A stretch of 64,000 bases of DNA, taken from NCBI GenBank assembly GCA_964252035.1, contig OZ176201.1; one strand, 5' to 3'. The notes beneath the pieces are model-generated. The model saw only the letters and a list, made by a program, of their open reading frames with translations, ran no database searches and was not told the DNA's origin. This document shows, piece after piece, positions 1 to 36,943 of the stretch. The stretch comes from Podarcis erhardii (taxonomy: Eukaryota). The first letter of the stretch is position 1; each line of letters opens with the position of its first letter. Made by a program: the position numbers and the translations under genes.

Positions 1-341
1 GAATCCTGCACAGTATGGTGTCTCCTCTTGGTGTGTGTCCCTCCCCCCAGTTCCTCATGTGCTGGCTTCAGTGCAGAGATCCTAATCCTCCCTCAGATGC
101 CAGCTCTGAGATCTGATTTAAATATTGGTTTACTAACCAGGATCTTAAACCACAATCTGATCCAGCTTAGTAAGCCAACATTAAATCAGAGTTCCCTTTT
201 TTGAATGTAATGGAGACCTCTGTTTAACACAAACTAGCATCTTTGTATTAAAGCTGGGCAGGGTGGATGCGAGGGAAGTAGAAGGGGAGCAGTGTGCAGG
301 CCTGACAATTTCCAGCTTCCTCAACCATGATCATGCTTGAT

Positions 342-478
342 CAGTGGTTGGCCAAACTTGGGCCTCCAGCTGTTTTTGGACTACAACTCCCATCATCCCT
401 CGCTAACAGGACCAGTGGTCAGGGATGATGGGAATTGTAGTCCCAAAACAGCTGGAGACCCAAGTTTGGCCAACACTA
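342..478. mobile_element. Palindromic hAT-type MITE (URR1-like)
   Basis: Near-perfect inverted repeat: TTGGCCAAACTTGGGCCTCCAGCTGTTTTTGGACTACAACTCCCATCATCCCT...AGGGATGATGGGAATTGTAGTCCCAAAACAGCTGGAGACCCAAGTTTGGCCAA. Degenerate relatives at about 9919-10084 and 10750-10840. Confidence 0.75.
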
Positions 479-925
479 CATTAGGATGAACAAAGGCATG
501 GGCTCACAATCTTTTCTGGCCCAGGCATACATATAGAAATCTAAAACCGTCATAGACACTTTGAAATACCCGTTTCACAGAAGAATAAATAAAATGTGGG
601 AACAAGCTACTCCTCCCCAAGGCAAGCAAATGCACTTTAAAAAGGGGGGGGAGAGCTGCAGGGGGCATTGACAAGCACCATGGCAGGTGTCTGGGAGTGT
701 AGTGACACCAATGGATACCACATTAGTGATACCAGAACTAAGGTTTGTTTGTTTTTTCTTAGTGCTCAGTGGGCATGTATTCTCTCTGGCTCCATATTAC
801 ATTTAATGCCCCCTACTCAGCTAAATAGAATTCAAAACATACTGTACTGAACATTACTACCTTTTCTGCTGCCAGAAGCATCTCACCTACCCCAGCCCAG
901 CCTGGAATTGCTAAGTTAACTTTAC

Positions 926-1074
926 CTCATGGGACATTATGATGCACACCAACATGTAGAATTCATCAAAGTTGACCTCCCCTTTGCCATCCCAGTCCAG
1001 TAGGTCAAACACCAGCATGATCTGAGCCTTGCTCAGGTCAGTTACATAGTGGAGAAAGTTGTAAAACTGCAGAT
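926..1074 (-). CDS. EFCAB9: EFCAB9 second coding exon (149 nt), EF-hand
   Basis: Missed by the ORF track. Read by hand: cccag|AT CTG CAG...CAT GAG|gtaaa gives (D)LQFYNFLHYVTDLSKAQIMLVFDLLDWDGKGEVNFDEFYMLVCIIMSHE. Phase 1 joins the upstream exon (G+AT = Asp), and the peptide matches recalled EFCAB9 (FYHFLHHVTDL..FDMLDW..GEIDF..FYMLVC). Later exons lie beyond position 1. Confidence 0.93.
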
Positions 1075-1499
1075 CTGGGGGAAATCCACATAAAAATGTG
1101 TGTTTTAACTACTGTATGTCCTTAAATACATCCTTAATTACATATTCATCTCAGAATACAATGTGGTTTCCCCACAACAGAGCGACCAGGAGACCTCCTT
1201 TTACTGCCTTGTAAATCAGAGCATGCTCTTAATATTCAACTTTATCTACAAGAAAGGAGTAAGCACTTTCCCAGGAAATGTAAGTTTAGGCAATCAGACT
1301 ACAGAAGAAGGTGGTTGGTGCAGGTTGCCTCCATTACTTTAAGACTCAATGAGAGCACCTGCTTGCAATAGATATGGCAGAGGGGCAGGGACAGTTTTGG
1401 CCATATCTCATTGCTCAAGAGCAAAGCCAAAATGCACAAAGTCTTGAGGCATGTGCAAAGTTCCAGTTATACTGAGCATCTTGGTAACACACTCCCCTA

Positions 1500-1800
1500 G
1501 CAATAAATGTTCCCACAACATGGAAATCAGCTTCCCGCTTTGGATTGATTGGCACAAAATGTTTGGCATGCATTAGTTGGAAAGAGACGTACAGTTTCAT
1601 TTGCCTCGCGTAATCCTCAAAGTGTATGGGCAGTGCCATCTGAGGTCTGAAAGTGGTCGCAGAACTAGTACTGATGCTCATTAAAGAGCCATCAATTGAA
1701 GATGATTTTACTTGAAAACACATACTCATCATATTGTGCTTATATTCAAAGCATAAGTTAGGAGAGGCGATATTCATAAAGCACCCACTCCTATGTTTGC
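1500..1800 (+). pseudogene. Possible degraded Penelope-like (GIY-YIG endonuclease) relic in EFCAB9 intron
   Basis: Frameshifted fragments CHLRSES/VAE, ILLENT and (R)EAIFIKH occur in the order expected for the recalled Penelope motifs CRL..EKSAVAEH, ILFENT, REAIEIHKH. Multiple stops. Confidence 0.35.
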
Positions 1801-2445
1801 CCCAGGATTGGATTATGAGCAGATGAATTCTGAGCTACAACAATGAGGAGCAGCTAGATGCAACAATGACACTTCAAATCACAGTATGCCAGCAGGAGGC
1901 TGAACCCTCCTGCAGCCATGCTTTGTTGCTCAAAATAGCTTTTTAATAAGCCATTTTTTCTTCCAGTGTGGGTTTCTTCCGATTTTTAAAAAACTATAGG
2001 GTTTTTTTAAAAAAGAAAACCTGTATATTTTCAGCAGGTGGAAAGCAAAGGAAAGAGTTCTGTTCTCCACAGCCACCCGCCCTACACTTAAATCTCCAAA
2101 CCACACCCTGTCGTTATTGGAATTTATTGTCAGACCCAATTCTGCATGTTGGGCCACTGCTGTTAAACCTAGTTTTGCCCTCTGAATTCCAGATACTAGG
2201 GACAACGAAGGGAAAGTTTATGCCTCCACATTTTGTGTGTAAACTTACCAAGGATATCTTGCCCACCCAGCAATGCTAACAGTATACCCTCCCAGATATT
2301 TGGTCCAGTCTGGGGTGGTTCTTTTTATAATCTGGCTTGTGGCCAAACGCCTTAAGAATGAAAAACCACAGGCTTCGTTTCTGAAGACATCTTTCAGAGT
2401 TCATGCACTCTGCTCTGATCCCTACCTCCCTCTTCTGATCAATTA

Positions 2446-2727
<282 letters not shown>

Positions 2728-4224
2728 TCACCTGCGGAATGCTGGCAGGTATTCACGGTGACGCCTGCATCACAGTCAAAGAATTCCACCTTGGAACCAG
2801 AACAGGAGGATGAAAAGAGAAAAGAAAAAGAAAAAAAAAACCACCTTCTACCATGTTCAAAATGGGTGCTCTCTGCCATAAGGGACCCAGGGGCAATACA
2901 TGACAAAAACTGGAAATGATCAAGTATTAATACTTTTGGAACAGTCCACAGAAAATGGGGGGGGGGTGTCACATTGAAATCAGTTGGGAGTGGAAATTGG
3001 CTGGGAGTGGAAACTATGGGTCTCCAGACTACAGCTCCCATAATCGCTGACCATTGGTGGTGTTAGGATGATTTGGAGTCCAATGGCTGAACGTGCTCCT
3101 GCTCCGTGGATTAAGCATTGATCTGCGCATTTTACCTTCCCTCAAATTGCAATATTCAGGGTGAAGGTAGAAACAGAAAAGGGATAGGGGTAGAAAGTGC
3201 ACTGCACAGATTTGGGCTCCATAGCTTATGTGCCCAGTAGGATGGTCAGTTGAAAAAAGCAGACAGGGATCCTTTAATAATTGGGCAGAAGGGCCAATTC
3301 CAGCATGCGTAACTAGCAATGCAAGCAACACCTGCATCAGTTCCTCCCTCTGCACAGCTCTTAAAGGTGCAGGAGCCTCATCTTATTTTTTTCACCTGAC
3401 CACCTCTGAGTCTTTTCCACAATCCTGATGTAAACTTTGCATGGACTGCCCTTTAATATTGTAGACTTGGAAGGGTCTTCTTGTCTAAGGAAATGTCATG
3501 AGAACATCTTACGTTTCCGGGTAACATCGTCCTTTGCCCAGAGCCCTCTAGAGTGGTGTGTTAGCCCACAATGGCCCAGATAGGTCAGAGGAATTGAGAA
3601 AGAGTTGCTCAAGGCCACCCAGTGAGGTCTGAAGCTTAACAGTGATTTGAAAGTGGCTTTCTCACATTATCAGCTGCCTGCTCTCATTGCAGGGGCTAGG
3701 TGGGGTTGCCCCCTGTTGGTATCAGTCATTGTTAATCTTTCTACATGGGGCATCATGAAGCTGTAACTCAGGGCATCACAATTTACTTGGTTTTGCAATT
3801 ATTACTTTTTAAAAAAATGTATATCTTGCTTTTCATCCCCCAAAAAGAAAACACGAATTACAGCTAACAGCATACAAAAACCCACAACATCAATGTAAAA
3901 CATAAAGAATAGTAACAACTTATAACCCACCAAGCCGAACAGTCTACCTGCCACTTATGGCAGGCTCTCAGGGCTTGGATCATTATTTGTGCTTTCTTCC
4001 TGGAGATGCAAAAACAGGGTTCAATATCTGACAGGATACAGCGCTTAGAAATCTGTCTTATAGAGAGTCAGGCCTTTGGTCCATTTAGACCATACCATCT
4101 ACTCAATACCTGGAGTGAGGAACCTCAATCCTGGGGGTCAAATGTTGCTATCTAGGCCTCTCTTTCTTGTCGTTGGTACTCTCCCCAGGCCATGGCCCTC
4201 AGTGGCCTGGCTTCACACCTCATT

Positions 4225-4976
4225 TTTCCCCCAATTTTTTTTATTCATTTTATAATACTAATAAACAACACAAACAGAAAAACAAACAATACAAACAAAT
4301 CCTTGTCTTATCCTTATTTTTTCTAAACATTGTTAGGTGAGCTTCCCCAAGTCCCCCCATCTGATTTTCATTTTACCTCATCATTAGCAGTTTACATATA
4401 TCATAATTTTTAACCATTTTTTTATCACGCTTACTTTTACCATAAAAATCTTCACATTTTATCACTTACAAATAATACTGTTTTAAAATACACTATCTTC
4501 TACTTCTAACCCTACAGCCTATATCCACTTCCAAAGCTATTCTAAGATTTAAATATTAACATATTTTTTCAAATATTCTTTAAACTTCCAATCTTCTTCC
4601 ACCGTCTCTTCTCTCTGGTCCCGGAGTCTCCCAGTCAGTTCGGCAAATTCCATATAGTCCATCATTTTCATCTGCCATTCCTCGAAAGTTGGTAAATCTT
4701 GTTTCTTCCAATTCTCCGCTAGTAATATTCTCGCAGCTGTTGTAGCATACAGAAAAAAAGTAACATCCTTTTTGGGGATTTCACCCCCCACCATACCAAG
4801 TAAAAAGGCTTCTGGTTTCTTAATAAATGTGTTTTTCAACACTTTTTTCAGTTCATTATAAATCCTTTCCCAGAAGTCTTTTACCTTGGGGCACGTCCAC
4901 CACATGTGGTAAAAGGTTCCTTCTTTTCCCTTACATTCCCAGCATTTATTATCATGAGTATGATACATTTTTGCTA
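4225..4976 (-). mobile_element. 5'-truncated L1 (ORF2 C-terminus plus 3'UTR), relative of element B
   Basis: Frame 4549-4968 encodes CWECKGKEGTFYHMWWTCPK...KKPEAFLLGM...EDWK, colinear with the end of element B ORF2. A-tail near 4235-4242; flanking repeats GGCTTCACACCT(C/T)ATT at 4209-4224 and 4977-4992. Confidence 0.9.
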
Positions 4977-6291
4977 GGCTTCACACCTTATTGGGTGGTT
5001 TTTTGCCAGACATGAATGTGTCCTTTAAGAATGCCTCTTGCTTACGTGGATGGAGAATAGAGGAGGATGTATGAGCATGTGTAGAAACTGGCCCCTAGAA
5101 GAGTGGTCAGGAGGGAATGTGGCCCCTGGGTGGAAAAGCAGAACTCTGGGGTTTCAGACCAGGAGCTTTTCCCACCCAGCTGGAGATGATTCAGTCTGGT
5201 GGGTCACAAGATGCACAGCCAAAATGGCAACTGGCAAAGCTAGTGAAGATTTACCACATAGCAAGTCCTGTCATTTCCAAATTCTGTAATTCCAAGCAGT
5301 TCCTCTAGATGTCCCTATTCATTTACATTTGTTAGTGTGTATGAGCAGCAGAAGTGGTCTGTTTCTGCCAAGACTACTGTACTGATCTAGTAGAATATTT
5401 GTTCAAGGTCCAGTTAAGTCAAAGTATATGTTTCATTTAGTAAAACTGGTTCATGGATCTCAAAACAGGTTTCTCTAACATTATCCTATCAGTCCAGCTG
5501 CCGGATAGTGTCTTTGTAAAACCCCATTGTGAGATGAGAGGTACTAAGCCAATGGCAGCCAAAGGGACGTGATACTCTAAGCCTCTGTGAGGTCATAGTG
5601 GAGTTGCAAGCTACGTGCCAGAGTAACAAAGGTCATAAGAGTAAATCAGGCAATCTTGAAGCTGGAAAGATCATACAGAGGCCTCAGAAACTACAGAAGT
5701 GAGCTTAGAAGAAACCAAAGGAGAGAGCAGGGCCCTCAGAAGACAGGTTCAGCAAATGGTCATTGATTACAGCTGTAATTGGTTCATATTTGCTTCCTAT
5801 AACCCTGTCCAACTTACTCCTTGACATTTTTGCAAGGTAAATTTGGCATGACTTATAATAGGCGTGTGTGTGTGCTATGTTGTATGAAGTCCACTAAAGA
5901 CAGGCTATTCTGAATAATTTTATATTACAATCAGAGGTGGCCCGTCCTGAGCTGTTCTGCCACCTGAGGCAAAAAGGGAATTGCCGCCTCCTGCTCTCTC
6001 CCTGCTGCTCCCGCCATGCCACGCCACCACCACTTCAACACCCCAGCTCCCACCAGGTTTGGCAAAAGCCAGGGGGTTCCACAAAGTGTTGTCGCTTGGC
6101 TCCTCTGCCTTGGGGTGACTAAAATGATTAGCAGCACCGCGCACCATAACACTTCCGTGTGGCCAGCAAGAGGGTGGCGTTCTGGTAGTGACAGAAGCAG
6201 TGGAGTGAGCGGAGTGCCATCTCTTGCACTTCCGCCGCCTGAGGCAAGCGCTTCACCCAGCCTCATGGGTGGAGCGGCTTCAATTACAGTA

Positions 6292-6497
6292 CAGTGGTAC
6301 CTCGAGTTAAGAACTTAATTCGTTCTGGAGGTCCGTTCTTAACCTGAAACTGTTCTTAGCCTGAGGTACCACTTTAGCTAATGGGGCCTCCCACTGCCGC
6401 CGCACGATTTCTGTTCTCATCCTGAAGCAAAGTTCTCAACCTGAGGTACTATTTCTGGGTTAGTGGAGTCTGTAACCTGAAGCATCTGTAACCACTG
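6292..6497 (+). mobile_element. Tc1/mariner-superfamily (Tigger/pogo-like) MITE, copy 1
   Basis: TA|CAGTGGTACCTC...CCACTG|TA; right TIR partly deleted; internal sequence shared with copies at 9039, 31136 and 34157. Confidence 0.85.
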
Positions 6498-6849
6498 TAT
6501 TCTGAATTAGGTGACTGTAAGCCACTGCCACCAAACCATGGGTACTAGTAATATTATTCATTCCACACAAATATTGGTTGTTTACAAAGACACCCATTCA
6601 AATACCGCTTCTACCACCCTTCAGGAACGCAGTAGGGGCGGGTCTGTGTGTTTTTGCAACCCTAAAGCTAGTGTAGCTAATCAATGCAGAGCTACAATTT
6701 ACAAATCGTTATCTGAATGAGAGACTCTCTGCTCAAGGATGACATTTACAGCTCCACCATCTGAGCCAAGTCTGCTCAAAGGGAACTCCTGTTCCATTCA
6801 GTGGCGCTCCCTCCCAGGTAAGCGGGGTTGCTAGCTCGCTTCTCGAAGT

Positions 6850-8200
<1,351 letters not shown>

Positions 8201-8827
8201 ACGAAACTTTCCTCAGAGGAGCTGCGAGTTCATTTTCACCAAAGTCACGTGGAGTTCTCCCCAAACACTTAGGGGTTTCGTTTCATACCTACAGGATAAG
8301 TTGTTATACTTCTGTTGCTGTACTCTGAGAAAGGGGGAGCGGGTAAATTATCCTGTAGCATGTCACTTTCACAAGTAACTCGTCCTCTTTGAAGAAGTGC
8401 CTTTCCTTCTCTCCTTAACTCCTTCAACTCCTGTGTGAAGCTGGATTCGAGCATTCATAAATGTGAAACTTATCTATATCCCGTGGTGTGAGTTAACTTT
8501 TGCATCGAGAACACACGTGGATAGATCAGAATGATCACTGCCTTTCCCAATCTCCTTCTCCCGGCTATTTAGTGGGTTGAGGAATCCTGCAAACCCCACA
8601 GCTGTGTGCATACAGATTTTGTTTGGATAACTTTACTCCTTGTACACATGGCAAGTCCATGCAAACCATACTGGATAGAGATATATTGTTCCTACCAGTG
8701 TGAATAATACAGTTCAGCGACTGAAAGGCATTAAGTATTGCAAGGAGAAATAGCCAGAGACCTGCTAGATCCAACCAAAGGCCTCTCTGGTCCAGCATAG
8801 GCCAGGCCACTGGCCAACCAGAAGCTG

Positions 8828-9023
8828 CAAGGGCCGGCCCTAAATACTTTGCTGCTTGAACCAGTTAAAGTGCTAAAGCACAGCCAAGTTATTCTGGCAC
8901 TTAAGGTAGAAAGCTCCTCTTCTCCAGCAGTAAAAGTACAATAAATATTAAACTAAATAACAATAATTTGATGCCCCACCATGGCACCCAGACACAGCTG
9001 GCCAATGGTAGGGCCCGTGCCTG
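8828..9023. mobile_element. Short hAT-like element
   Basis: Ends CAAGGGCCGGCCCT and AGGGCCCGTGCCTG resemble CAGGGCCGGCCCT TIRs. Confidence 0.45.
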
Positions 9024-9038
9024 TGCAGGATATAACTG

Positions 9039-9280
9039 CAGTGGTACCTCGGGTTACATACACTTCAGGTTACATACGCTTCAGGTTACAGACTCCGCTA
9101 ACCCAGAAATTTTACCTCGGGTTAAGAACTTTGCTTCAGGATGAGAACAGAAATTGTGCTCCCGCGGTGCGGCAGCAGCAGGAGGCCCCATTAGCTAAAG
9201 TGGTGCTTCAGGTTAAGAACAGTTTCAGGTTAAGAACGGACCTCTGCAACGAATTAAGTACTTAACCCGAGGTACCACTG
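9039..9280 (-). mobile_element. Tigger/pogo-like MITE, copy 2
   Basis: TIRs CAGTGGTACCTCGGGTTA / TAACCCGAGGTACCACTG; flanks TG and TA; opposite orientation to copy 1. Confidence 0.88.
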
Positions 9281-12069
9281 TACAGTTGCCCTCTTTTGCC
9301 GATTTCCCCCAGCAAGTGGTATTCATAGGCATGCCGCTTCTGGCCCTGGAAAGCGATCACAGCTAGTAGCTTCCCATAGCTGCTGTCATATTCATGCAGC
9401 CTGCAAAGCCTTGAAAGAAGGTTAAATCCTTCTTCCATTTGGTTAGTAGCAAATTCTTACTGGGTTTCGTTTCATGTAGGAATGGTGTTGGGCAATGGCG
9501 AATGAAAGAAAATATTCTGCGAGAGAATTTTTAATTTATCCTTCTTATGAGAGTGACATTCATGGCAACAGGTGGGGATGGAGTTGGGGATCAAGTGTCC
9601 TCTTTCTGTATGTCCATGTAGTGGGGGTTTTCCCCCCTGCAGGAGCACATGTCTTGCCAGAAGTCTGTAAATCATATAGACTGTGTGTTCCTTCAGGGGA
9701 GATGTGGCGTAATCTTGGATTAAAGAGGTAATGCAGATTTAGGGGTGCCCTGCATTTTGTTGTTCTATTCTCCCTGCCTCCGATCCAACACCTCTCTCTT
9801 AGATTGTAAGCTCCTCTAAGCAGGAACCCTAGAAGCTCAGCCCCAGTATGTTTCAGCAAGACACATCAAGTTCCTGTTAGTAGGTATTTCTAGATGGATG
9901 CTTTGACAATACTGTTCATCAGTCTTCCCCAACCTGGTGCCCTCTAGGTGTTAAGATCTACAGCTGTTGTCAGCATGCTGAGAACAGCTGTAGTTCATAA
10001 TGCCTAGAAGGCACCAGGTAGGGAATGATGGGAGACTGAGCTATAGTCAAAAACATCTGAAGAACTTCAGGTTGGGGAAGGCTGCTCTCTGCCACATAGA
10101 TTTTCTCAGCTGAGTCAACTAATTGGGTGCAATTCATGATAATGGGCAGCTTTATTTATAAAATGTCAGGGAGATGCTCTACAGATCGCTTGCTCTTCCA
10201 GATGTTGGTCTTAGTCCTTTATATTTACATATATAAAAATAGTTTCTTGTTCAGACTTCTTTCCTCCCCCACCCCCACTTCCCCCATTTGAGTGTCTTCA
10301 GGTGTTTAATCTAGAGCTGTCTTCAACTTTACCAGACAAATCCTTTTGGGGAGCCTGGATTGACTTGGCAAATCTTGTTAGTAATAGTGACTAGAAGCTA
10401 ATGAGAGGCCAGCTGGGCTCATTTGCAGGGGGAATATGAATGCTGCTAGATTGAAGACAGATTTCTGGGAAACAAGGTTAGCAAGAGCATGATTGGGGCT
10501 TCGGCAAGTAGAGGTGGTACTGTAAGGTGAGGCTAGTGATGGAGTCTGGCCATGCGTTAGACTTTAGAGATGAAGGGAACTGGCTTGGATCCCTGCCCTT
10601 AGTGAGTGAAGTACAAAATCAGTGACTGCATTGCTGAAATGGCTGGTGTAGTGCAGGGACCGCAGCTCTCTTTTTGTGGAAGTAAGAATAAAAAATTGAC
10701 CTGTTTTTCAGCAGTTGCAACAGATAACACTTCCACAATTGCACAAGGCAGACTTAGCCAACCTGATAGCCAGCATGCTAATTGGGGCTGAGGTGAGTTG
10801 TAGTCCAAAACACCTGGAGGGCAGAAGGTTGGCTAAAGCTGGCTTAAGCAATATGCAAGGGTTCTTGTAGGTTCTTTGACAATTCTGTTGACTACACAAA
10901 ATAATGGCTGTCAAGAATCCATTGTGGTAAACTATTTAAACCATGTGATGCATGTGTGTTCCCACTACTCTGGAAGGCAAGAATTGGTGTTTCCATCCAA
11001 ACCACAAGAGTAATAAACCGCCTTTCCTGTTACAATTCAGAAAAGCATTTAACTTTTGTGTTTAGTAGAAGCAATGTAGATAGAGACTGCCACTGTCAGA
11101 CTAAAATGCTGCTGCAAGTCTCTGGAAATCACTCATTTATGTCAGAAGCCTCTCCTGCTAAGAAAGTAAGATGAGACCTGCTGGATCAGGCCAGTGTCCC
11201 ATCTAGTCCAGTATCCTGTTCTCCAGCAGCTGATACTCAAAAGCATACTGCCTCCAACAGTGAAGGTAGACATAGCGCTCGGGGTTAGTAGCCATTGGAT
11301 AGCCATATCCTCCATCAATTTTTGAGCAAGATCGAGCAACATCAGTTGGTTGGTGCAAATCGTCCTGCTTACTTTTTTTTTTTTTTTTTCCCCCGCTTTT
11401 TTTGTCTATTTTGGGCTTTTCTTCCTCAATTACTTGTGGAGTTTAATTTTTTATGAATTGGGGGCGCGGAGACTGACGGCGACGGATACTTTCCTTTGCT
11501 TGCCTTTTCTTTTCCTCAGTTGGAGTAACGCTATACAGACTAAGACCTCTAGTGGATAAAGAGAGGCAGCACAATTTGTTCTTTATTTTCCATTTTTCAC
11601 TCAATTGACAGACTTTGATTGTCGTTCAGTAGTTATCTAAGCGATTGCTCCTGAATACATAATAGGACCACCTTACTTCAAAGGGGTAGAGGGCTCTGAA
11701 ATACCCTTCTTCCATCCCCCTCCAACTGAATCTGATGAACTAGTTACTAAACTGTTATCTCAAATATTATACCTCCCCCCTTCGTGTTTGATAGGACCTT
11801 ACTAAATGAACATCATTAAAAAAGGATTAGCCTGAGTGGAGGCAAGAAGACAATACAGCGGACTATTATTCGAACTTCTGGTGGTATATTCATAAGTTGT
11901 AAAAGCCATAAAGACTACTTAAACTTAAATAATTGTTAAATTGTACATAACTGTGAAATAACTGTGAAAGGACAGAATTGGGATAAGTTGACAAACTTTG
12001 TTGGGAGGAGGTTGTGGCTGAGGGTTAGGCAAGAAGTTGTTGGTGTGAGGGGAGAACCACTGGGTCATA

Positions 12070-13062
12070 ATGTCAAACCCAACAAAGAAAGGGGCTGAGG
12101 GGGGGACACCGGTAGAGAGGAAAGGATCTAAACAAGAGATAGACTTTAAAGCAGATATTCTAAGAATGTTTGCGGAAATAAAGCAGAGTGAAAAGAACCT
12201 AGAATCTAAATTAGAACAAGTAGATAATAAAATTGGAAAAATGGATAAAAAAATTGACGAAACAGTAAATGAACTGAAAGGGCAAATGAAAGAAGTGTTT
12301 AGAAGGACTCAATCGGTTGAGGAGGGATTAAAGAAGACAAGATTAGAAATGAAAGAGGTTAAACGGGAAGAAGAGAGATTAAAAGTAGAAATGACGGATT
12401 TAAATAAAGCACAGGAAGAGATAAAGGATGTGATAGCGATGAACGAACTTCGGATGAGGGAGGTGAACCTGAGATTTAGAGCGGTGCCAGAGACTCAAGG
12501 AGAAAATATCAAAGACAAACTAATAACAGAACTGGCAAACTGGATGGAACTACCTACAGGAGAGATGGCAAAGGCGGTCCAAAGTGCATTTAGAATGAAA
12601 GTGAAGACAAATAAAGCAAAAAGATTTACAGGGGATTGCCTGATTACATTCAAGGATAGAGAGATGAGAAATTTGATCCTGCAGAAGAACAGAGAAAAAA
12701 GATTGAATATAGATGGGAACTTCATAATCATTTTTAAAGATATACCAATTAGGCTGCTTAAACGAAGAGACCCTTACAAACTGCTGACCCAGACATTAAA
12801 GAGAAACAATATTGAGTTCAGGTGGGAATTCCCAGAAGGAATTTCATTTATGTATAGAAGTAAGAGGCACAGACTGACAAACCCAGAAGAAACTGGGAAA
12901 TTTTTGAGGAAATATAAAGAACTCAAAGTTGATCCAGAGGAAAGTAAAGGAGCAGAGGGAAGAACACCAGAGCAACTAAAACCAAAGGCGGCGGAAGGAG
13001 AGAATGGAAAGGAAACGGACGAGGAAGAAGACGAGGAAGAAGAAGAGGCAGACAAATTATAG
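12070..13062 (+). CDS. L1 ORF1p (coiled coil, RRM, CTD), 330 aa, element A
   Basis: Heptad-rich N-half, NLRFRAVPE motif at the RRM start, IFKD and FRWEFP CTD-type motifs, acidic C-terminal tail; lies directly upstream of ORF2. Confidence 0.9.
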   Translation: MSNPTKKGAEGGTPVERKGSKQEIDFKADILRMFAEIKQSEKNLESKLEQVDNKIGKMDKKIDETVNELKGQMKEVFRRTQSVEEGLKKTRLEMKEVKREEERLKVEMTDLNKAQEEIKDVIAMNELRMREVNLRFRAVPETQGENIKDKLITELANWMELPTGEMAKAVQSAFRMKVKTNKAKRFTGDCLITFKDREMRNLILQKNREKRLNIDGNFIIIFKDIPIRLLKRRDPYKLLTQTLKRNNIEFRWEFPEGISFMYRSKRHRLTNPEETGKFLRKYKELKVDPEESKGAEGRTPEQLKPKAAEGENGKETDEEEDEEEEEADKL

Positions 13063-13096
13063 GCAAACAGCTAGACTTTATTCAAAGTAAGATATC

Positions 13097-16000
13097 ATGG
13101 CGCTAAAAATTTGGAATTGGAACATAAATGGGATGAACGAAAAAAAGAAAAGGAATAGTATTGAACAGTTTCTAAAAAGGAAAAATTTAGACATCATATG
13201 CCTACAAGAGACACATGTAGCAAGAAGACACAAAAAAATTTTAATTAATAAAAGACTGGGAAACGAATTTGTATCGTTAGACAAGGAGAAAAAAAGAGGA
13301 GTGGTCTTATATATTAGAAAACAAATTGAAGCGAAACAAATTTTCAAGGACGAAGAAGGAAGGATAATTGCGGTTCGAATCATCTGGCATGGAGAAAATC
13401 TGATTATTGTGGGGATCTACGCACCGAACGGAAATAAAACAGAATTTTATAAGGTGTTAGAAGAGAATCTATCTGAATATATGGATCAAAAAATCATTTT
13501 AATGGGTGACATGAATGGGGTGACCTCATTAGAAATGGACAGATGCAGAGAAGGAATAAGTAAAGAAGGAAAACTACCAAAATCCTTTTTTTCGATGATT
13601 GAGAGTTGCAATTTGATAGATATTTGGCGCCTCAAGCATCCATTAGACAAACAATTTACATTCTATTCTGAACCAAATAAGTCAATGTCAAGGATCGACC
13701 AGATTTGGATCTCGAGTGAACTGACACCAAGAACCCAACGGATAGAAATTCAACCGAAAGTAATCTCTGATCACAACCCGATAGAATTTGAATTAAGAAG
13801 CTTCGAAGAAGGAACCTTTAGATGGAGATTGAAAGATTATCTCCTAGATGATCAGAAAATAGTAGAAAAAGCGCAAAAGGAATTATCAGAATATTTCATA
13901 GCCAATTGTAACAAAGGCACAAAGGATAAAGTAGTATGGGATGCCAGCAAGGCAGTAATGAGAGGCTTCTTCATTCAGCAAAATTCAATTAAAAACAAAA
14001 ATAGAGAAAAAGAGAAAAAAGAAATTTTGAAGCAAATTATGGATAATGAACAAAAATTAATTAAGAAACCAAACAATTTGGAGATAAAAGAAAAAATTAA
14101 AATTCTACAATCACAGTTTGCCATTATAATAAATAGAGAAATAGAGTGGAATATAAAGAAGTTGAGACAAAGAAACTTTGAATTTGCGAACAAATCAGGA
14201 AAATGGCTCGCATGGCAATTAAAAAAAAGGAAAGAACAGAATACAATAAATAAGATTATAATAGAAGGAGAAGAGATTACCAACCCAAAGGAAATAAGAA
14301 AGGGATTCTTGGACTACTATAAAAGACTATATAAAAATACAGAAAGAAACAACTCGAGGAAAATAGAGAGATACCTGAAAGAGAAAAAGACACAAAAGAT
14401 CCCGACTGAAAAAAGAGACCAACTGAACACTCCAATTGATATAGCAGAGATAAAAGAGGTGATTAAAGAGTTAAAAAGGGGGAAAGCACCAGGGCCGGAT
14501 GGCTTCACTGCCTGTTATTACAAAGAAATGGAACCAATTTTGATAACACCATTGAAGGAAGTGATGAACAATATTCTAAAAGAGGGAGAAATCCCGGAAA
14601 CATGGAAGGAGGCGTTCATTACATTCATCCCAAAACAGGACTCAGATCTAACCCAAGTCAAAAACTACAGGCCGATTTCACTCCTAAACTTAGATTACAA
14701 GATATTTGCTGCAATTCTAGCAAAGAGGCTGAAAAAGATTCTGTCAGAAATCATACATAAAGACCAGGCCGGCTTCTTACCAAACAGACAGATGAAAGAC
14801 AACATAAGATATATAGTTAATGTGATGGAATACCTGTCTGATAGGATTGATAAAAGAGCCGCAATGATCTTTGTAGATGCCGAGAAGGCATTCGACAACA
14901 TAATATGGGACTTTATGATGAGAAATCTAGAATACATGGAGATAGGCGAAGACTTTCTTAAGGGAGTCAGAGCTATTTACACAGATCAGAAAGCTAAACT
15001 GATTATAAATAATGTAGTTACAGAAGGAATAAGGATACAAAAGGGAACGAGGCAGGGATGCCCTCTCTCGCCGTTACTTTTCATAACGGTATTAGAGGTT
15101 CTTTTGAATTCGATCAGACAAAACAAGGCTATAAAGGGAGTGACAATCGGACAGAATGAGTACAAGACCAAAGCATTCGCAGATGACTTGGCTATAATGA
15201 TTGAGGAACCAACAAGTACGATAAAAGCAGTTTTGGAGGAAATGGAACAGTTTGGAAATCTGGCAGGCTTTAAACTCAATAAGAAAAAAACAAAAATAAT
15301 AGTAAAAAATATGGATCAAGACCAAATAGAAACAATGCAACAAATAACCCAAATAGAGGTGGTCAAAAAGGTAAAATATCTGGGTATTTGGATAACTCCC
15401 AAAAATATAGATTTATATAAAAACAACTACGAACCAGCTTGGAAGGGAATCAAAAAGGACTTGGAGGTGTGGGCAAAATTGAAATTGTCATTTTGGGGAA
15501 GGATCTCTACAATCAAAATGAACGTGCTCCCAAAATTACTGTTCCTATTTCAGACTATCCCCATAATTAAGGGAATTAAGATCTTTAAGGAGTGGCAAAG
15601 AGTGATCTCAAAATACATCTGGCAGGGCAAAAAACCGAGAATCAAATTTAAATTGCTAACAGATACAAAAGAAAGAGGAGGTTTTGCCCTGCCAGATCTG
15701 AAATTGTATTACGAGGCTTCATGTCTTTGCTGGACGAAAGAGTGGATTAAATTGAAGAATAACGAACTGTTGGATTTGGAGGGATTCAACAACAGATTTG
15801 GGTGGCATGCTTATCTATGGCACGAAAAAAAGAGAGTCCATAAGGGTTTTGAGAACCACATATTCCGAGGTCCCTTAATTGAGGTCTGGGACAGATACAA
15901 AAATCTATTAGAACTTAGAACACCACGCTGGTTTTCACCCTTAGAAGCAAAGAGTATAAAGAGATTAAATATGGGAAGTAAATGGATAACATATGACCAA

Positions 16001-16858
16001 CTGTTATATAAAGAAGGGGAAAAGTGGAAAATAAAACCGTATGAGCAGGTGAAGGAATATGTTTATGACTGGATGCACTATTTCCAAATGAATGAGGTGT
16101 TTAAAAAAGACAGTAAAGAACGAGGTTTCATGGACAAAGAATCGTTATTTCAAAGCGAGGTTATAGGTAATGATACGAAAAATTTATCAAAAATGTATAA
16201 ACTGTTATTGGATTGGAACCTGGTAGATGAAGAAGTTAAGTCGGTAATGATTAGTTGGGCAAAGGATGTGGGCCACAATATACAATTTGAGGAATGGGAA
16301 AAATTATGGAAGGAGGGCTTAAAATTCACGGCATGTACGACGTTAAAAGAGAACACGATGAAGATGTTTTATAGATGGTATATGACACCGGTGAAATTGG
16401 CGAGGATGTATAAGACATGCAATAGATGCTGGAAGTGTAAGGATAAGGAGGGTACATTCTATCACATGTGGTGGGGCTGTGGGAAGGTGAAAGACTTCTG
16501 GGAGAAAATATACAATGAGTTAAAGAAGATCTTAAAGTATACGTTTAGAAAGGAGCCAGAAGTCTTTTTACTAGGACTAATAGGAAAGGAAATAAAAAAG
16601 GAAGACTGTAAATTTTTTAGATATGCAATCACAGCCGCAAGAGTGTTATTGGCCCAGAGATGGAGACAACAGGAAATACCGACCATAGAGGATTGGAGAA
16701 CAAAATTGTTAGAATACGCAGAGTTAGATAAATTGACAGGAAAGATTAGATACTTAAGAGACCAAAAATTCATCGGGGACTGGAAGAAATATGTAGATTA
16801 TCTGGAATGCTTAAGTAAAGGAAAGATGACGCTTAAGGGATTTAAAGAAGCACTGTAA
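13097..16858 (+). CDS. L1 ORF2p (APE endonuclease, reverse transcriptase, CCHC), 1253 aa, element A
   Basis: WNINGMN, LQETH, GDMN, RIDQIW, SDHNP (APE); KAPGPDG, YRPISLLN, DAEKAFD, GTRQGCPLSPLLF, FADD, YLG (RT); CWKC-x8-H-x4-C. No stops or frameshifts. Confidence 0.96.
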   Translation: MALKIWNWNINGMNEKKKRNSIEQFLKRKNLDIICLQETHVARRHKKILINKRLGNEFVSLDKEKKRGVVLYIRKQIEAKQIFKDEEGRIIAVRIIWHGENLIIVGIYAPNGNKTEFYKVLEENLSEYMDQKIILMGDMNGVTSLEMDRCREGISKEGKLPKSFFSMIESCNLIDIWRLKHPLDKQFTFYSEPNKSMSRIDQIWISSELTPRTQRIEIQPKVISDHNPIEFELRSFEEGTFRWRLKDYLLDDQKIVEKAQKELSEYFIANCNKGTKDKVVWDASKAVMRGFFIQQNSIKNKNREKEKKEILKQIMDNEQKLIKKPNNLEIKEKIKILQSQFAIIINREIEWNIKKLRQRNFEFANKSGKWLAWQLKKRKEQNTINKIIIEGEEITNPKEIRKGFLDYYKRLYKNTERNNSRKIERYLKEKKTQKIPTEKRDQLNTPIDIAEIKEVIKELKRGKAPGPDGFTACYYKEMEPILITPLKEVMNNILKEGEIPETWKEAFITFIPKQDSDLTQVKNYRPISLLNLDYKIFAAILAKRLKKILSEIIHKDQAGFLPNRQMKDNIRYIVNVMEYLSDRIDKRAAMIFVDAEKAFDNIIWDFMMRNLEYMEIGEDFLKGVRAIYTDQKAKLIINNVVTEGIRIQKGTRQGCPLSPLLFITVLEVLLNSIRQNKAIKGVTIGQNEYKTKAFADDLAIMIEEPTSTIKAVLEEMEQFGNLAGFKLNKKKTKIIVKNMDQDQIETMQQITQIEVVKKVKYLGIWITPKNIDLYKNNYEPAWKGIKKDLEVWAKLKLSFWGRISTIKMNVLPKLLFLFQTIPIIKGIKIFKEWQRVISKYIWQGKKPRIKFKLLTDTKERGGFALPDLKLYYEASCLCWTKEWIKLKNNELLDLEGFNNRFGWHAYLWHEKKRVHKGFENHIFRGPLIEVWDRYKNLLELRTPRWFSPLEAKSIKRLNMGSKWITYDQLLYKEGEKWKIKPYEQVKEYVYDWMHYFQMNEVFKKDSKERGFMDKESLFQSEVIGNDTKNLSKMYKLLLDWNLVDEEVKSVMISWAKDVGHNIQFEEWEKLWKEGLKFTACTTLKENTMKMFYRWYMTPVKLARMYKTCNRCWKCKDKEGTFYHMWWGCGKVKDFWEKIYNELKKILKYTFRKEPEVFLLGLIGKEIKKEDCKFFRYAITAARVLLAQRWRQQEIPTIEDWRTKLLEYAELDKLTGKIRYLRDQKFIGDWKKYVDYLECLSKGKMTLKGFKEAL

Positions 16859-19800
16859 AAAAGTAATAAGTATTGATTAAAGGGAATAGGAGGAAAAGAG
16901 ATAAATAATGTCAATACAAGATTGAGGAATGCGTAATGAAAGTGATGAATACGGATGATTTACGGGACAGCTGAGGGAAGTTTGAAAGAAAATGTAGTGA
17001 TGAAAATGATGTGAAATTACTGTATATATATATATTATTTTTCGTTGTTGTTGTCGTTTGTCTTGTTTTATGTTTGTGTTTTATGTTTAATAATAAAAAT
17101 TATATGGCAAAAAAAAAAAAAAAGCATACTGCCTCCAACAGTGAAGGTAGACATAGCGCTCGGGGTTAGTAGCCATTGGATAGCCATATCCTCCATCAAT
17201 TTGTCTAATCCTCCTTTAAAGCCACCCAAGTTGGTGGCCACCACTGTCTCCTGTGGGAGCAAATGCCCACCTATCATAGCGGAGTTCCTCCATCCTGTTG
17301 CTCCATGTCAGTCGCCCTTTTCTGAACATTTCCCAACTCCGCAATATCTTTTTTGATGTGAGATGATCAGGACAGTACACAGTATTCCAAAGCAGTCATA
17401 TCATAAATTTGGATGGTGGCATTATGATGTGAATAATTTTATTTTCAGCTAGTTGTCCCTGTTCTGTGTTTTGTTGTTGTTTTTTAAGACTGGATGGGGG
17501 AAGCACTGCACTCCTCAATAAAAGAGAAAGAAACGGGGAATGGGAGAGGTACCCAGTCTGTGATACCAGCTGGAGGAATGTGTCACTCTGGGAATACTGT
17601 AGCTCACTGTTAAAAAGCATTTATTTGGAAATTAACATCCATTTAAATGGATCTTTTCAAGTGTGTCTAAAGGTCATGCTCTGGTTATTTCCCTGCATGA
17701 ATTGTCACAACTAACCCCCCCCCCAACAGCCTTCCTGACCCCCTTCCCTTTGTTCCGTGTATGTCTGCTGCCAAGACTGTCCATCTCCCCCAGTAGTTGT
17801 GGGCTCTGGCCCAAAAAAGCTTAACTTTTAAGACACCACAATCTTGTACATTTCGTTCAGTGGGGCTTACTTCTTAGAAATTGGCATAAGATTGCAGCTA
17901 AACTAACAGACATACCGTAGTTGCCTCCCTGGAATAATTCTGATTGAGTGCACCACTCCTCAACCCCATCATTGTACCATTCATACCCAACATGAATTTC
18001 TTCTCCTTACTTCATGGTCGTTTAAGCATGATTTCTCTTCATGGTCTTTTAAACATGATTTTTTCTTTGGGCAAGGGCTTCATTGTTCAAACAAAAACCC
18101 AGGGAATGAGCTCAGCTTCCACTCCTTTCTTTGTACTTGATCAGACTTTTCCATTTCCTCCACCTCCTTTCACTTCTTCCTTATACCCCCTTTCCTGTTT
18201 GCTTGTTTTTAAATCCAGCCAAAGTCAAGCAGAGCTCCAGTGGGCGAGAGATGCAACACAATTGCCGCTGCAAGCTTACTCAGAAGTTGTCCCACTGCTT
18301 TCAGCGGGGCTTACCTCTCAGGAAAGTGCGGCTTTAGGCCTGTGCTTGGTTTTCCCCATTGAAATAGTGGAATTTAAGCATTTTGGAGGGCCAGATTATG
18401 CCCCCTTGCCAACATGGGCAGTCCTTGATGTATGAGTAGCTTCTTGTAAAAATTTTGGGTTGGAAGGGAATTTAATTGTGCAAAGATAAAGAAATTTAAG
18501 GTGTAGTCCTATGCACACTTGCTTGGAAATAAGCCTCACTGAACACAGTTGGAGTTACTTCTGTGAGTAAGCATGCATGGGACAGTGCTGTAAGTAACGG
18601 AAGACGGAAGACTTCTCTATCTCACTTCTTGTATAACTGAATGGGAAGAGGGCATGGCAAGCTTGGGTGCCCGTAGGCTCCAGAGTATGCCCGGTGATGT
18701 CACAGGTCCTGAGCCACAGCCCAGAGACCTTTGAGCCTGCACAAACAGGGCAGATTGGGACTTCCCTGCCCTCCGAATGCCATGGCGAGGGTGGCAGCTT
18801 TGTTGTCAGATTATCAGCTTGGAATCCTTGTCCAGAACCTCAAACTTCTTGTACATGCAGTTCTCTTAGTAGTTGATTGCGAGACGGGGTGAGGAGTATG
18901 TAAAACACTCCAACAGAGTGATGTTTAAATCTAAGAAAACTGAACTACATAGCATATAAGCAACATGCTATATAAGAACATCCATTTTGTTTAAATGCTG
19001 TGTAATATAAACCATATATATTTCATAGTGGGACTCATGCAGCCCGGGTGGTGGGTAGCTGCAGCAGCACCGGTCCCCTAAACTGAACTGTGGCCGAGAG
19101 AGCTTCAGGTATCATTCAGTTTCTCTGAACTGGCTTTCTATGAATTAATAACCAGCCTGTATTGAAAAGACTCTGCTTCAGATTTCAGCTCAACCAGGAA
19201 TTGGGCAAATTGTTCTTTGCTCAGCCTCACTGGCGAATTTAGAGATAATCCTCCCTATTTTTACAGAGTTGTTATTATGAACATGCATAGCATACAGTCA
19301 TAGGAGTGATCCTGCTGGCTTCAGTGGGGCTTAGGATTGGACTGTAATTCGCACGCAGCAATCATCAGTAAGCACTTGTTTTTCAATAAATTTGAGGTGT
19401 ACTGTATAACTTTGGTAACCCAAGACTGCATGATTGGCGGTGGTGTCATAGGTGAATCATGATTGTGTCAAACAATTTGAGGCTTCTTGGTCATCTGTTC
19501 TGGGTGATTTATTCACATCTTGTTGGCATGTTAAGGATACTCTCCCTTGCTTGTGTTATGAAATGAAAAGCTTGCGGGAGGGGGAATGGAATGTATTTTA
19601 AGAAGTGCCTATCATCACATATGTTTACTATAGATACAGTTTATATACCTCTCCATGAGACTTCCTCTCAGCCAGAAGAGGGACTTCCTGGTTCATTTTA
19701 AAACTCCAAGTGGAAAGCAGAAATTGGGCCAAGGTCACTCAGTAGTTCAGAAAGTGGTCTTTAGCAACCCTCACGCTCTCTTGAGGTCACTTGTTGATGC

Positions 19801-31361: not shown

Positions 31362-33021
31362 TACTTTATTACCTGCTTTTTGCCCACCCGCTAATAAATT
31401 ACTCCTGGACTGATCCGTTTGGGAAGTGATACAGGACTATCCAAAGATTTCACCAGTTTATGTTTTTTCCCTTTCTCTTTCCTAGCTGTGCTTTAAGGTC
31501 AGGTGTTCTTTGTATTAGGCTGCCAGCACAGGACCAGTGAAGAGCTGCAAGGGTGATACTCTGGTCTTCTGCCCCTAATAAGCCTCTGAAGAACCTTTTC
31601 ATTATAATATTTTATATTTAAATAATCTCTGAATTATTTCAAACTAGAAACAAAACAAAAAACCCCACAACAAATCACTTAATAGTGAATACGCAGGTAT
31701 TGCACATTGTGTGTGTCTCTCCATGTTAACACCTGGGACTGGAGCCCGTATCGACCCTTTCTACATCAAAGGCCTGGGGTTCTGCCCCTCTCTCTTGACC
31801 ATATTTTCTTTTCCCTCCCACTCTGCATCCATGGTTTGTGAGCCCTGTTTGGAATGTGGCTTTATTGGATAATGTGCAAGAGGTCATTGATAAATGACCT
31901 AGCTTCTCTCACCATTCGCCTCTACCACTTTTATGTGTGCTTCTTGCGTTTTATATTTATTGCAGCTATCTCCCTCCAGCAATGCTATCTTCAAATCTCC
32001 CCTCTTCCCTTCATTAAGAAATAAAGATACTGTGCTGCTGGCTCTGGATTGGAACCAACAAAAGTTTAGCATTGACCCAAAAAAAATTGCTTGGAAGAAT
32101 TTTGCAGGTTGGAATGCTATGGGTGACTTGAATATGTGACCACTCTAAACTTAGTTATGTGAGTGGCTCAGATGCTTTTGTTTGTTTATGCTAGGTGTGG
32201 ATCCAAGCTATGGATGTCCCAAATGAGAAAATAGGTTCTAGAGAGGTTCCCCCCACCCCAACCAAAGATCACGTATGTGGCACATCCAGGGGATAAATTC
32301 TACCAGAGGGCAATCCAAGTGACCTCCCTATTCACCATCCTCCCTTTTCTCTTGTTTCATGATATCAGCCTTCCGCTGGGTGGTCATAAGAGCAGCATCA
32401 CTGTTGTCCTACAAGGCAGCAGAGTGTTCTAAATACAGGCTTGTTCCCCCCAGTCATTGTTTCGCTTCCTCTGAAATGAAAACAGCTAGGCTGGCTCTGG
32501 CTGGCTCAAAAGGTTCCTCTGGCTCCAGGCTGGCTTCCGGTGAACTGTGATTTTGCAAGTTCCTCTAGTAGCAGGCAGTGCTTCATCATCTCCTCTGCCT
32601 CGTTTGTTTTGCAGCAGGGGGTGGGGGTTCCCCTCTTTTTGATAGCGCTTGGGGTTTATTTCTCACCCCCTTCCGCCATCCATGTGGAATCCAGACCTTT
32701 ATGCTCTTCTGCACAGATGCCAAAATGCTGCTTTTAATAATGCTTTTAACTGTAATGCATTTATGTGTGTTTTCATTAATGTTGGCTTCTTCATGCACAC
32801 CTCCCCTAATAGGTACATTTCTGTACACCTTTTTTTAGGTGCAGAACTGCACTGCAGAATTCAAAGAGGTGTGCACTTTGAAGGATAGCTGCCTTTTGGT
32901 TTGCGTATTGTTTCCAGAAGTGTTAATTAAGTAGATTCATATTCAAAACCCAAACCAAACCAAATTTCTCCCTCATCCGTAATCCGTGTGTATGTGTAGG
33001 CTTAGCTGCAGCCTTGCCATT

Positions 33022-33307
33022 AGATGACCACCAACTTGGATGGCTTGAAAAGAGAGTTAGACAAATTCATGGAGAAGGCAGCTATCAATGACTAATAGCT
33101 GCAATGGCTCTGCTCTGCCTCCACAGTCAGAGAGGCAGGAATGCTTCTGAATACCAGTTGCTGGAAACTGCAAGAGGAGAGTGTTCTCCTGCGCTCATGT
33201 CCAGCTTGCAGGCTTCCCACAGACACCTGGTTGGACACTGCGAGAGCAGGATGCTGGACTAGATGGGCCAAAGGCCTGATCCAGCAAAGCTCTTAGTATG
33301 TTCTTAT
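33022..33307 (+). mobile_element. CR1 3' end fragment
   Basis: ACCAACTTGGATGGCTTGAAAAGAGAGTTAGACAAATTCATGGAG...GGATGCTGGACTAGATGGGCC...TATGTTCTTAT tail. Confidence 0.8.
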
Positions 33308-34156
33308 AAGGAAACAGACACATACTGTCTCTTTTTGTTCTGTCCAGTGCATAGGCTTCCTTTCCCACACACCTCAAGTGTGAGTCCAGAGCTGGAGGAA
33401 TTTGCTACGCTGCGGACGCCTTCCAAGAAGCTTAATTGAAAAGGAAGCTTCTAGTAGCTCTCCTCTAAAAACAAGCTGTGTAAACCACGGAAGGAAAGGC
33501 AGGGCTCTTGCAAGGGGCTTGCAGTTCCTCACAAATGAAACCTCTGTTAATAACAGTCGGCTCTTGAATTCTAGCAGCGGTCCTGAGACAAATGGGTGGT
33601 GCCTGCATTTCTCTTCAGCAGTTTGTGGTGAAATGCCCCACCCTCACAAGCAGACCTAATGCCCCGCCTCATAACTGTTTGCACCCACTATCTGATAATC
33701 ATCATCATCATCATTATCCATTGCTCTTGCAGCGAACTCATTCTCCAAGTGTGTAGATCCTTATGGATCCAAGACAGCACCACCCACACAGCGGAGGGGA
33801 GTATCAGCAGGCTCAGCTGGAAGGGGAATTCCATGTTTGGCAGATAAACACAAATCTTTGGGTGGGTGGAAAGGGAAATTAGGGGGCTTGTTTGCAGGGG
33901 ATGGATGGGGTGGAAAACTGGGAGGCAGGGAAAATGAAATGGAGTGTTGTTGTGTGGCTGGCTAGCTGGAATCCTGTACAGGAGCATTCCACATGACAAC
34001 ATTTTTTTGCAGGTATGAAGAACCTGGGGGTGGGGAGGCTTTCTTCTACTGGCAGTTTCCCTTTTTGTAAGGGTCCTCCCCCCTCCAAGAAAAAAAATAT
34101 GATTGACTGCTCAGACTGAGCCTGCTGACAAACCCTAGACCAGTCCAAGGCCCATA

Positions 34157-36938: not shown

Positions 36939-36943
36939 CCAAA

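What the first reader, a model, noticed from the sequence alone, without database searches (positions are those of the whole stretch)
11239..17202. Intact L1 flanked by a perfect 83-bp target-site duplication
Seen: AAAAGCATACTGCC...CCTCCATCAATTT occurs identically at 11239-11321 and 17120-17202, bracketing the 5.8-kb L1. Removing the L1 and one copy restores a continuous CR1 fragment. The left boundary (tactc^aaaa) gives a bottom-strand nick 5'-TTTT/GA-3', an L1-endonuclease-type site. Established: L1 TSDs are usually about 7-20 bp; much longer ones are mostly known from cultured-cell assays and are rare in germline genomes. The other L1s in this window have about 8 and 16 bp TSDs. Inference: second-strand cleavage or priming happened about 80 nt downstream, either as a rare repair-type event or as a family-specific property of this lizard ORF2p. 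Zero mismatches, CpGs included, point to a very recent, possibly polymorphic insertion.
Basis: partly seen in the sequence, partly recalled or inferred. Interest (0 to 1): 0.72.

Follow-up and report, generated by a model that had tools for sequence, protein, structure and literature searches.

The report
Lizard L1 with 83-base target duplication
A complete, coding-intact LINE-1 jumping gene in a lizard genome is flanked by an exact 79-83 base duplication of its landing site, five times the usual length; this is a rare class of insertion already known from cultured-cell experiments, not a new mechanism.

Summary
An exact 83-nt direct repeat (11239-11321 and 17120-17202) brackets a 5,798-bp L1 (11322-17119). 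The L1 has open ORF1 (330 aa) and ORF2 (1253 aa), every endonuclease, reverse-transcriptase and Cys-rich motif, and a short A tail. A diverged copy of the same host repeat elsewhere in the window runs straight through left flank, one 83-nt segment and right flank, so the site was single-copy before insertion. The first nick fits an L1 endonuclease site (TTTT/GA on the bottom strand). The duplication is 79-83 bp, because four A's could belong to the tail or to the target.

The best reading is one ordinary endonuclease-started insertion whose second-strand break fell about 80 nt away. That puts it in the known "long TSD" class, which is rare and has been reported mostly from cultured cells. The break lies at the first TTT/purine site on the top strand, which hints at the L1 nuclease but is a post-hoc observation.

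Two other L1 insertions in the window have 13- and 12-bp duplications. The family-specific idea, the polymorphism idea and read-level support for the junctions could not be tested. Earlier notes of this scan mention a 163-bp and a 33-bp case in the same genome; neither is checked.

The parts
11239..11321 (+). Left copy of the target-site duplication (83 nt; the first 4 A's are native target sequence here)
   Evidence: Exact direct repeat D1, 100% identity; read
11235..11242 (-). First-strand (bottom-strand) nick site, 5'-TTTT/GA-3' on the - strand; the nick lies between 11238 and 11239, or up to 4 nt further right
   Evidence: Sequence. The position follows from the A tail abutting the right copy. 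Assignment to the L1 endonuclease is an inference from the known TTTT/AA-type preference
11322..12069 (+). L1 5' untranslated region (748 nt, AT-rich, 14 CpG, with an internal T18 run at 11373-11390)
   Evidence: That it reaches the family's true 5' end is inferred from its length only; no second copy was available
12070..13062 (+). ORF1, 330 aa, open; coiled-coil N-half and an L1 ORF1p-like C-half
   Evidence: No Pfam family at E<=0.001. Weak match to human L1 ORF1p structures, E 0.012. 31% identity, E 4e-28, to the ORF1 of the second L1 in the window. Nearest ESM Atlas clusters are LINE-1 type transposase / PF02994, score 0.94
13097..16858 (+). ORF2, 1253 aa, open; APE-type endonuclease, reverse transcriptase, C-terminal Cys-rich motif
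   Evidence: Pfam Exo_endo_phos 7e-17 and RVT_1 4e-41. Residues 5-1233 align to human L1 ORF2p 10-1251, E about 1e-173. Motifs WNING, LQET, YAPN, GDMN, RID, SDH, FADD and C-x2-C-x8-H-x4-C are all present
16859..17108 (+). 3' untranslated region with an AATAAA-type signal shortly before the tail
17109..17119 (+). A tail: 11 A, or 15 counting the 4 A's shared with the duplication
17120..17202 (+). Right copy of the target-site duplication
17200..17204 (+). Second-strand (top-strand) break in the pre-insertion site, 5'-TTT/G-3', between the last base of the duplicated segment and 17203
   Evidence: It is the first TTT/purine site on the top strand downstream of the first nick; background is 1.2% of positions
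32980..33330 (-). Diverged paralogue of the host repeat into which the L1 inserted; serves as a stand-in for the empty site
   Evidence: 75% identity over 142 columns spanning 17 nt of left flank, the whole 83 nt once, and 38 nt of right flank

Best explanation
[quoted passage not shown] The whole 5.8-kb RNA was then copied. The only unusual step is that the top strand was broken 79-83 nt downstream instead of about 15 nt. Filling in the two long overhangs duplicated that stretch. It belongs to the known, rare 'long TSD' class of L1 insertions. The insertion is young: both reading frames are still open. As a sub-hypothesis I give about even odds, the distant break was made by the L1 endonuclease itself at the first T-run/purine site available on the top strand. 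Shown: the repeat, the element, the single-copy ancestral state and the nick-site sequences. Inferred: the order of events and who made the second break.
For: The 83-nt repeat lies exactly at the element's two ends. The element is L1-type, with open ORF1 and ORF2 and all catalytic motifs. The A tail directly abuts the right copy, and the left flank reads CTC then AAAA, giving TTTT/GA on the bottom strand. A paralogous host-repeat copy carries the segment once and is continuous with both flanks. There is no target deletion, inversion or filler beyond 0-2 T at the 5' junction. The top-strand break sits at the first TTT/R site. The duplicated segment has no unusual fold, z 0.38. Long TSDs are a documented outcome of L1 insertion: a >20 bp class is recognised, >100 bp occurs in under 10% of HeLa events, and such lengths are the majority in repair-deficient cells.
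Against: No orthologous or allelic empty site was seen; the single-copy state rests on a 75%-identical paralogue. In the cell-culture data as summarised by Kojima, extremely long TSDs went with 5'-truncated inserts while full-length ones had 10-17 bp, so a full-length element with 83 bp is an unusual combination. The TTT/G coincidence is one post-hoc observation (P about 0.012), and a recent preprint reports that second-strand cleavage by ORF2p depends on helix distortion rather than sequence.
Confidence: 0.85

Rival explanations
1. Long duplications are a regular property of this L1 family's ORF2p, or of this lizard's repair background, not a one-off. Second-strand cleavage would be placed differently than in mammalian L1.
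For: TSD length is known to depend on the LINE species (Yamaguchi 2014). Unchecked first-reader notes of this scan report a truncated L1 with a 163-bp flanking repeat and an L1 with a 33-bp TSD in the same genome. This family's ORF2p is only 54% identical to that of the neighbouring L1, which made a 13-bp TSD.
Against: The other L1-type insertions noted in this genome have 12-24 bp TSDs. The catalytic motifs are all standard.
Confidence: 0.08
2. Assembly artefact: the true insertion has a short duplication, and the extra bases next to one junction were added by the assembler.
For: The runs that hold the stretch hold only 0.68-0.74 of its sampled words.
Against: An artefact would have to place 60-70 extra bases, identical to the adjacent target, exactly between a unique flank and the L1 end. 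Untrimmed contig overlaps give adjacent tandem copies, not copies 5.9 kb apart. The window has no gaps. The missing words are what is expected when contigs collapse a multi-copy young repeat.
Confidence: 0.04
3. Repair-type capture: the first nick is by the L1 endonuclease, but the distant top-strand end is a pre-existing host nick, gap or replication-fork discontinuity that the insertion used. This is a variant of the best explanation that differs in who made the second break.
For: Servant et al. propose that distant unrelated nicks or replication and repair ends explain large TSDs. The usual second-strand distances reported for ORF2p are +7, +11 and +19 nt, so 83 nt lies outside the enzyme's normal reach.
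Against: The break coincides with the first TTT/purine site on the top strand, which a random host nick would hit about 1 time in 80.
Confidence: 0.4
4. The target already carried a tandem 83-bp duplication and the L1 landed exactly between the two copies.
For: None beyond formal possibility.
Against: The paralogous repeat copy has the segment once. The L1 would need to land on the exact junction and make no duplication of its own. The A-tail side fits an endonuclease site at the start of the segment.
Confidence: 0.01

Closest known systems
Long target-site duplications (>20 bp, up to kilobases) of engineered human L1 in cultured cells (Gilbert 2002/2005 and Symer 2002, as summarised in PMC2912911, PMC4245944 and PMC5223499)
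   Same: Endonuclease-type first nick, A tail, and a flanking duplication several times the usual 14-16 bp. In both cases this is explained by a distant second-strand break.
   Different: Here it is a natural germline copy in a lizard, from an L1 lineage far from the human one. It is full-length with both genes open. In the HeLa series the extreme TSDs accompanied 5'-truncated inserts, and all 6 full-length inserts had 10-17 bp.
Large TSDs of L1 inserts in nucleotide-excision-repair-deficient cells (Servant et al. 2017, PMC5223499)
   Same: The same outcome (54 bp to several kb), with typical cleavage sites and A tails.
   Different: There it is the majority outcome and depends on a host defect. 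Here it is one event, and nothing is known about the host's repair state.
Ordinary full-length L1 insertions (human: TSD peak 14-16 bp; 64 of 66 full-length elements within 10-20 bp)
   Same: Structure of the element, nick site, tail, and clean junctions.
   Different: Duplication length is 79-83 bp.
Second intact L1 in the same window (35392-40907)
   Same: Same architecture: ORF1 343 aa, ORF2 1245 aa, A tail. ORF2p is 54% identical.
   Different: 13-bp duplication; different family (about 64% nucleotide identity; unrelated 5' UTR).

Membership tests
L1 clade of non-LTR retrotransposons | ORF2 with N-terminal APE-type endonuclease carrying the catalytic residues | tested here: met
   Pfam PF03372 7e-17. 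Match to L1 endonuclease structures 1vyb/8sp5, about 4e-31. Motifs WNING, LQET, YAPN, GDMN, RID and SDH present
L1 clade of non-LTR retrotransposons | Reverse transcriptase with FADD, and collinear similarity to L1 ORF2p over the whole length | tested here: met
   PF00078 4e-41. Residues 5-1233 align to human ORF2p 10-1251, E 2.5e-173, far above R2 (about 1e-28). FADD at residue 694
L1 clade of non-LTR retrotransposons | C-terminal Cys-rich (CCHC) motif in ORF2p | tested here: met
   C-x2-C-x8-H-x4-C at residue 1111
L1 clade of non-LTR retrotransposons | ORF1p of the coiled-coil / RRM / CTD type | tested here: inconclusive
   No Pfam hit at E<=0.001. Weak hits to human and mouse ORF1p structures, E 0.012-0.028. 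Nearest atlas clusters are LINE-1 type transposase, score 0.94. Clear homology to the ORF1 of the other L1, E 4e-28
L1 clade of non-LTR retrotransposons | A tail, and insertion at a T-run/purine site with a flanking duplication | tested here: met
Long-TSD class of L1 insertions (>20 bp) | Direct repeat >20 bp exactly abutting the 5' end and the A tail | tested here: met
   79-83 bp, 100% identical
Long-TSD class of L1 insertions (>20 bp) | The pre-insertion site carries the segment once | tested here: met
   Met indirectly: a paralogous host-repeat copy is collinear with one copy. The orthologous or allelic empty site was not seen
Long-TSD class of L1 insertions (>20 bp) | Both junctions confirmed in raw reads | not testable with these tools

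The most novel reading that the evidence does not exclude
In this lizard lineage, L1 insertions (this family, or all families because of the host's repair setting) have a heavy tail of 30-200 bp duplications. This would arise because the second-strand break is placed by sequence, at the next T-run/purine site, rather than by a fixed distance from the first nick. The 83-bp case here and the unchecked 163-bp and 33-bp cases noted elsewhere in the genome would be samples of that tail.
Probability: 0.1. Interest if true: 0.6.

Novelty: new member of a known kind. Interest (0 to 1): 0.3.

Why it matters
How the second DNA strand is cut and joined is the least understood step of L1 insertion. This copy shows that a break about 80 nt away is compatible with complete copying and clean 5' joining in a natural germline event, not only in truncated inserts in cultured cells. 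Two exact 83-bp repeats 5.9 kb apart could recombine and delete the element precisely. That would imitate an empty site and would matter if such insertions are used as presence/absence markers (the point is raised in PMC5223499). As a single event it does not change what is known. It would gain weight only if a genome-wide survey showed an excess of long duplications in this family or species.

Tried and rejected
The Rfam scan stopped at 17096, and the DNA pattern used only the last 31 nt of the duplicated segment.
The exact ORF1p and ORF2p are not in the protein collection. The findings search by sequence was blank. A metagenome scan for the 3' 31-mer of the segment found nothing, as expected for a lizard locus.
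- Structure of the duplicated segment as a cause of the distant break: rejected. The fold is no better than shuffles, z 0.38.
- Rfam on 1-17096: nothing.
- Host repeat identity: there are no long frames in the flanks, so 'CR1' stays unverified.
- 5' transduction or homology-mediated capture as the source of the repeat: rejected. Both copies are identical to each other and continuous with the local flanks, while paralogues differ by about 25%.
- The two large protein searches were not run.
Full report
**What is there**

Positions 11239-11321 and 17120-17202 are identical over 83 nt. A 40-nt piece of the repeat, allowing three mismatches, occurs only at these two places in the window, against none expected. 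The 5,798 bp between them (11322-17119) are an L1-type element on the + strand:
- a 748-nt 5' UTR;
- ORF1 at 12070-13062 (330 aa);
- a 34-nt spacer;
- ORF2 at 13097-16858 (1253 aa);
- a 3' UTR of about 250 nt;
- an A run of 15, of which the last four are also the first four bases of the repeat.

ORF2p has the APE-type endonuclease and reverse-transcriptase domains. It aligns from residue 5 to 1233 with human L1 ORF2p (E about 1e-173). It keeps every catalytic motif I checked, including FADD and the C-terminal Cys-rich motif.

ORF1p has no Pfam match. Three weaker lines still point to an L1 ORF1p: weak similarity to human and mouse L1 ORF1p structures, L1 ORF1-type clusters as its nearest neighbours in the protein atlas, and clear homology to the ORF1 of the other L1 in the window. 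'Intact L1' is therefore justified for coding capacity. Whether the 5' end is the family's true start cannot be said without a second copy.

**Is the repeat a target-site duplication?**

I joined the left flank (ending at 11321) to the right flank (starting at 17203) and compared the result with the window. An older, about 75% identical copy of the same interspersed repeat lies at about 32980-33330 on the - strand. It runs without interruption through the last 17 nt of left flank, one copy of the 83 nt, and 38 nt of right flank. Further left-flank similarity continues after a 78-nt indel. So the ancestral repeat carries the segment once, and both flanks are continuous with it. The L1 insertion doubled it.

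I could not verify that name, because the flanks have no informative reading frames.

**The two breaks**

The A tail abuts the right copy. The left flank reads CTC followed by four A's, so the bottom-strand nick was 5'-TTTT/GA-3'. The four A's can be assigned to the tail or to the target, so the nick may lie up to four bases further in, and the duplication is 79-83 bp. This is an ordinary L1-endonuclease-type site.

The top-strand break lies between the final TTT of the segment and the G at 17203. Counting on the reconstructed site, this is the first TTT/purine site on the top strand downstream of the first nick, and such sites make up 1.2% of positions locally. That hints that the L1 endonuclease also made the second cut, at the first site it could use. 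It is one post-hoc observation, and a recent preprint reports that ORF2p's second-strand cut is structure-driven rather than sequence-driven.

The segment itself has no unusual fold. The 5' junction is clean, apart from two T's that could be element, filler or microhomology. There is no target deletion, inversion or truncation.

**Local baseline**

The window holds two other L1-type insertions.
- One, at 35392-40907, is also coding-intact (ORF1 343 aa, ORF2 1245 aa). It belongs to a different family (ORF2p 54% identical) and has a 13-bp exact duplication.
- The other is a 756-bp 5'-truncated fragment on the - strand (4221-4976) with a 12-bp duplication.

The 83-bp case is therefore an outlier here too.

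**Age**

Eighty-three identical bases, including two CpGs, only bound divergence at under about 1.8% per copy (95%). The open frames bound it more tightly. About 6% of possible substitutions in the two frames make a stop codon. With indels at an assumed 0-15% of the substitution rate, intact frames over 4.75 kb imply under about 0.3-1% neutral divergence. The insertion is young, but 'very recent or polymorphic' is not shown.

**Context from papers**
- Full-length human and chimpanzee L1 duplications peak at 14-16 bp. In the HeLa recovery experiments, extremely long duplications accompanied 5'-truncated inserts, whereas all six full-length inserts had 10-17 bp (PMC2912911).
- Of 66 full-length human elements, all but two had 10-20 bp. 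Duplications over 20 bp are treated as a separate class, and TSD length differs between LINE species (PMC4245944).
- Duplications over 100 bp occur in under 10% of HeLa events and in most events in excision-repair-deficient cells. The authors propose distant unrelated nicks, or replication and repair ends, as the cause. They also note that long flanking repeats may later delete the insert by recombination (PMC5223499).
- Reported ORF2p second-strand cleavage positions are +7, +11 and +19 nt (PMC12633430).

So the phenomenon is known. A natural, germline, full-length example in a lizard is a new instance of it.

**What could not be done**
I worked beside those places and sent none of their letters to a search tool afterwards.
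- The exact proteins are not in the protein collection.
- As a result, junction support from raw data, the empty allele, and the duplication lengths of other copies of this family are all untested.
- The run table is not interpretable on its own. One sample of the presumed source species holds 0.68-0.74 of the sampled words. Related organisms hold 0.05-0.15, and the top value happens to equal the share of the stretch made up by flanks.
- Earlier notes of this scan call the genome a lacertid (wall-lizard type). They list L1-type duplications of 13-24 bp, plus unchecked first-reader notes of a 33-bp and a 163-bp case. These are leads only.

**Verdict**

This is a real and clean long target-site duplication around a young, coding-intact lizard L1. 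It is best explained by one canonical insertion with a distant second-strand break. The family-specific reading has no evidence yet. Interest is modest.

Noticed in passing
window 35392-40907 (+), duplication 35379-35391 and 40908-40920: A second coding-intact full-length L1 of a different family (ORF1 343 aa, ORF2 1245 aa; ORF2p 54% identical to the first), with a 19-A tail and an ordinary 13-bp target duplication. Two divergent, apparently active L1 families lie within 25 kb.
   Followed up: partly
window 4221-4976 (-), duplication 4209-4220 and 4977-4988: A 5'-truncated L1 fragment (ORF2 end plus 3' UTR, 68% identical to the first L1 over 290 nt) with a degenerate tail and a 12-bp duplication.
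   Followed up: partly
window 11373-11390: An uninterrupted T18 run followed by C5 lies 52 nt into the L1 5' UTR. The first 51 nt have no counterpart in the other L1's 5' UTR. Whether these bases belong to the family's 5' end or were picked up at insertion cannot be told from one copy.
   Followed up: no
window 10738-10852: A 27-nt inverted repeat (81% complementary, 61-nt spacer) in the left flank, about 400 nt upstream of the insertion. Not examined further.
   Followed up: no
window 35391/40921 and 11321/17203: Both + strand L1 insertions have their top-strand break at TT/GT (AATT/GT and ATTT/GT). Two cases only, so this may be chance.
   Followed up: no
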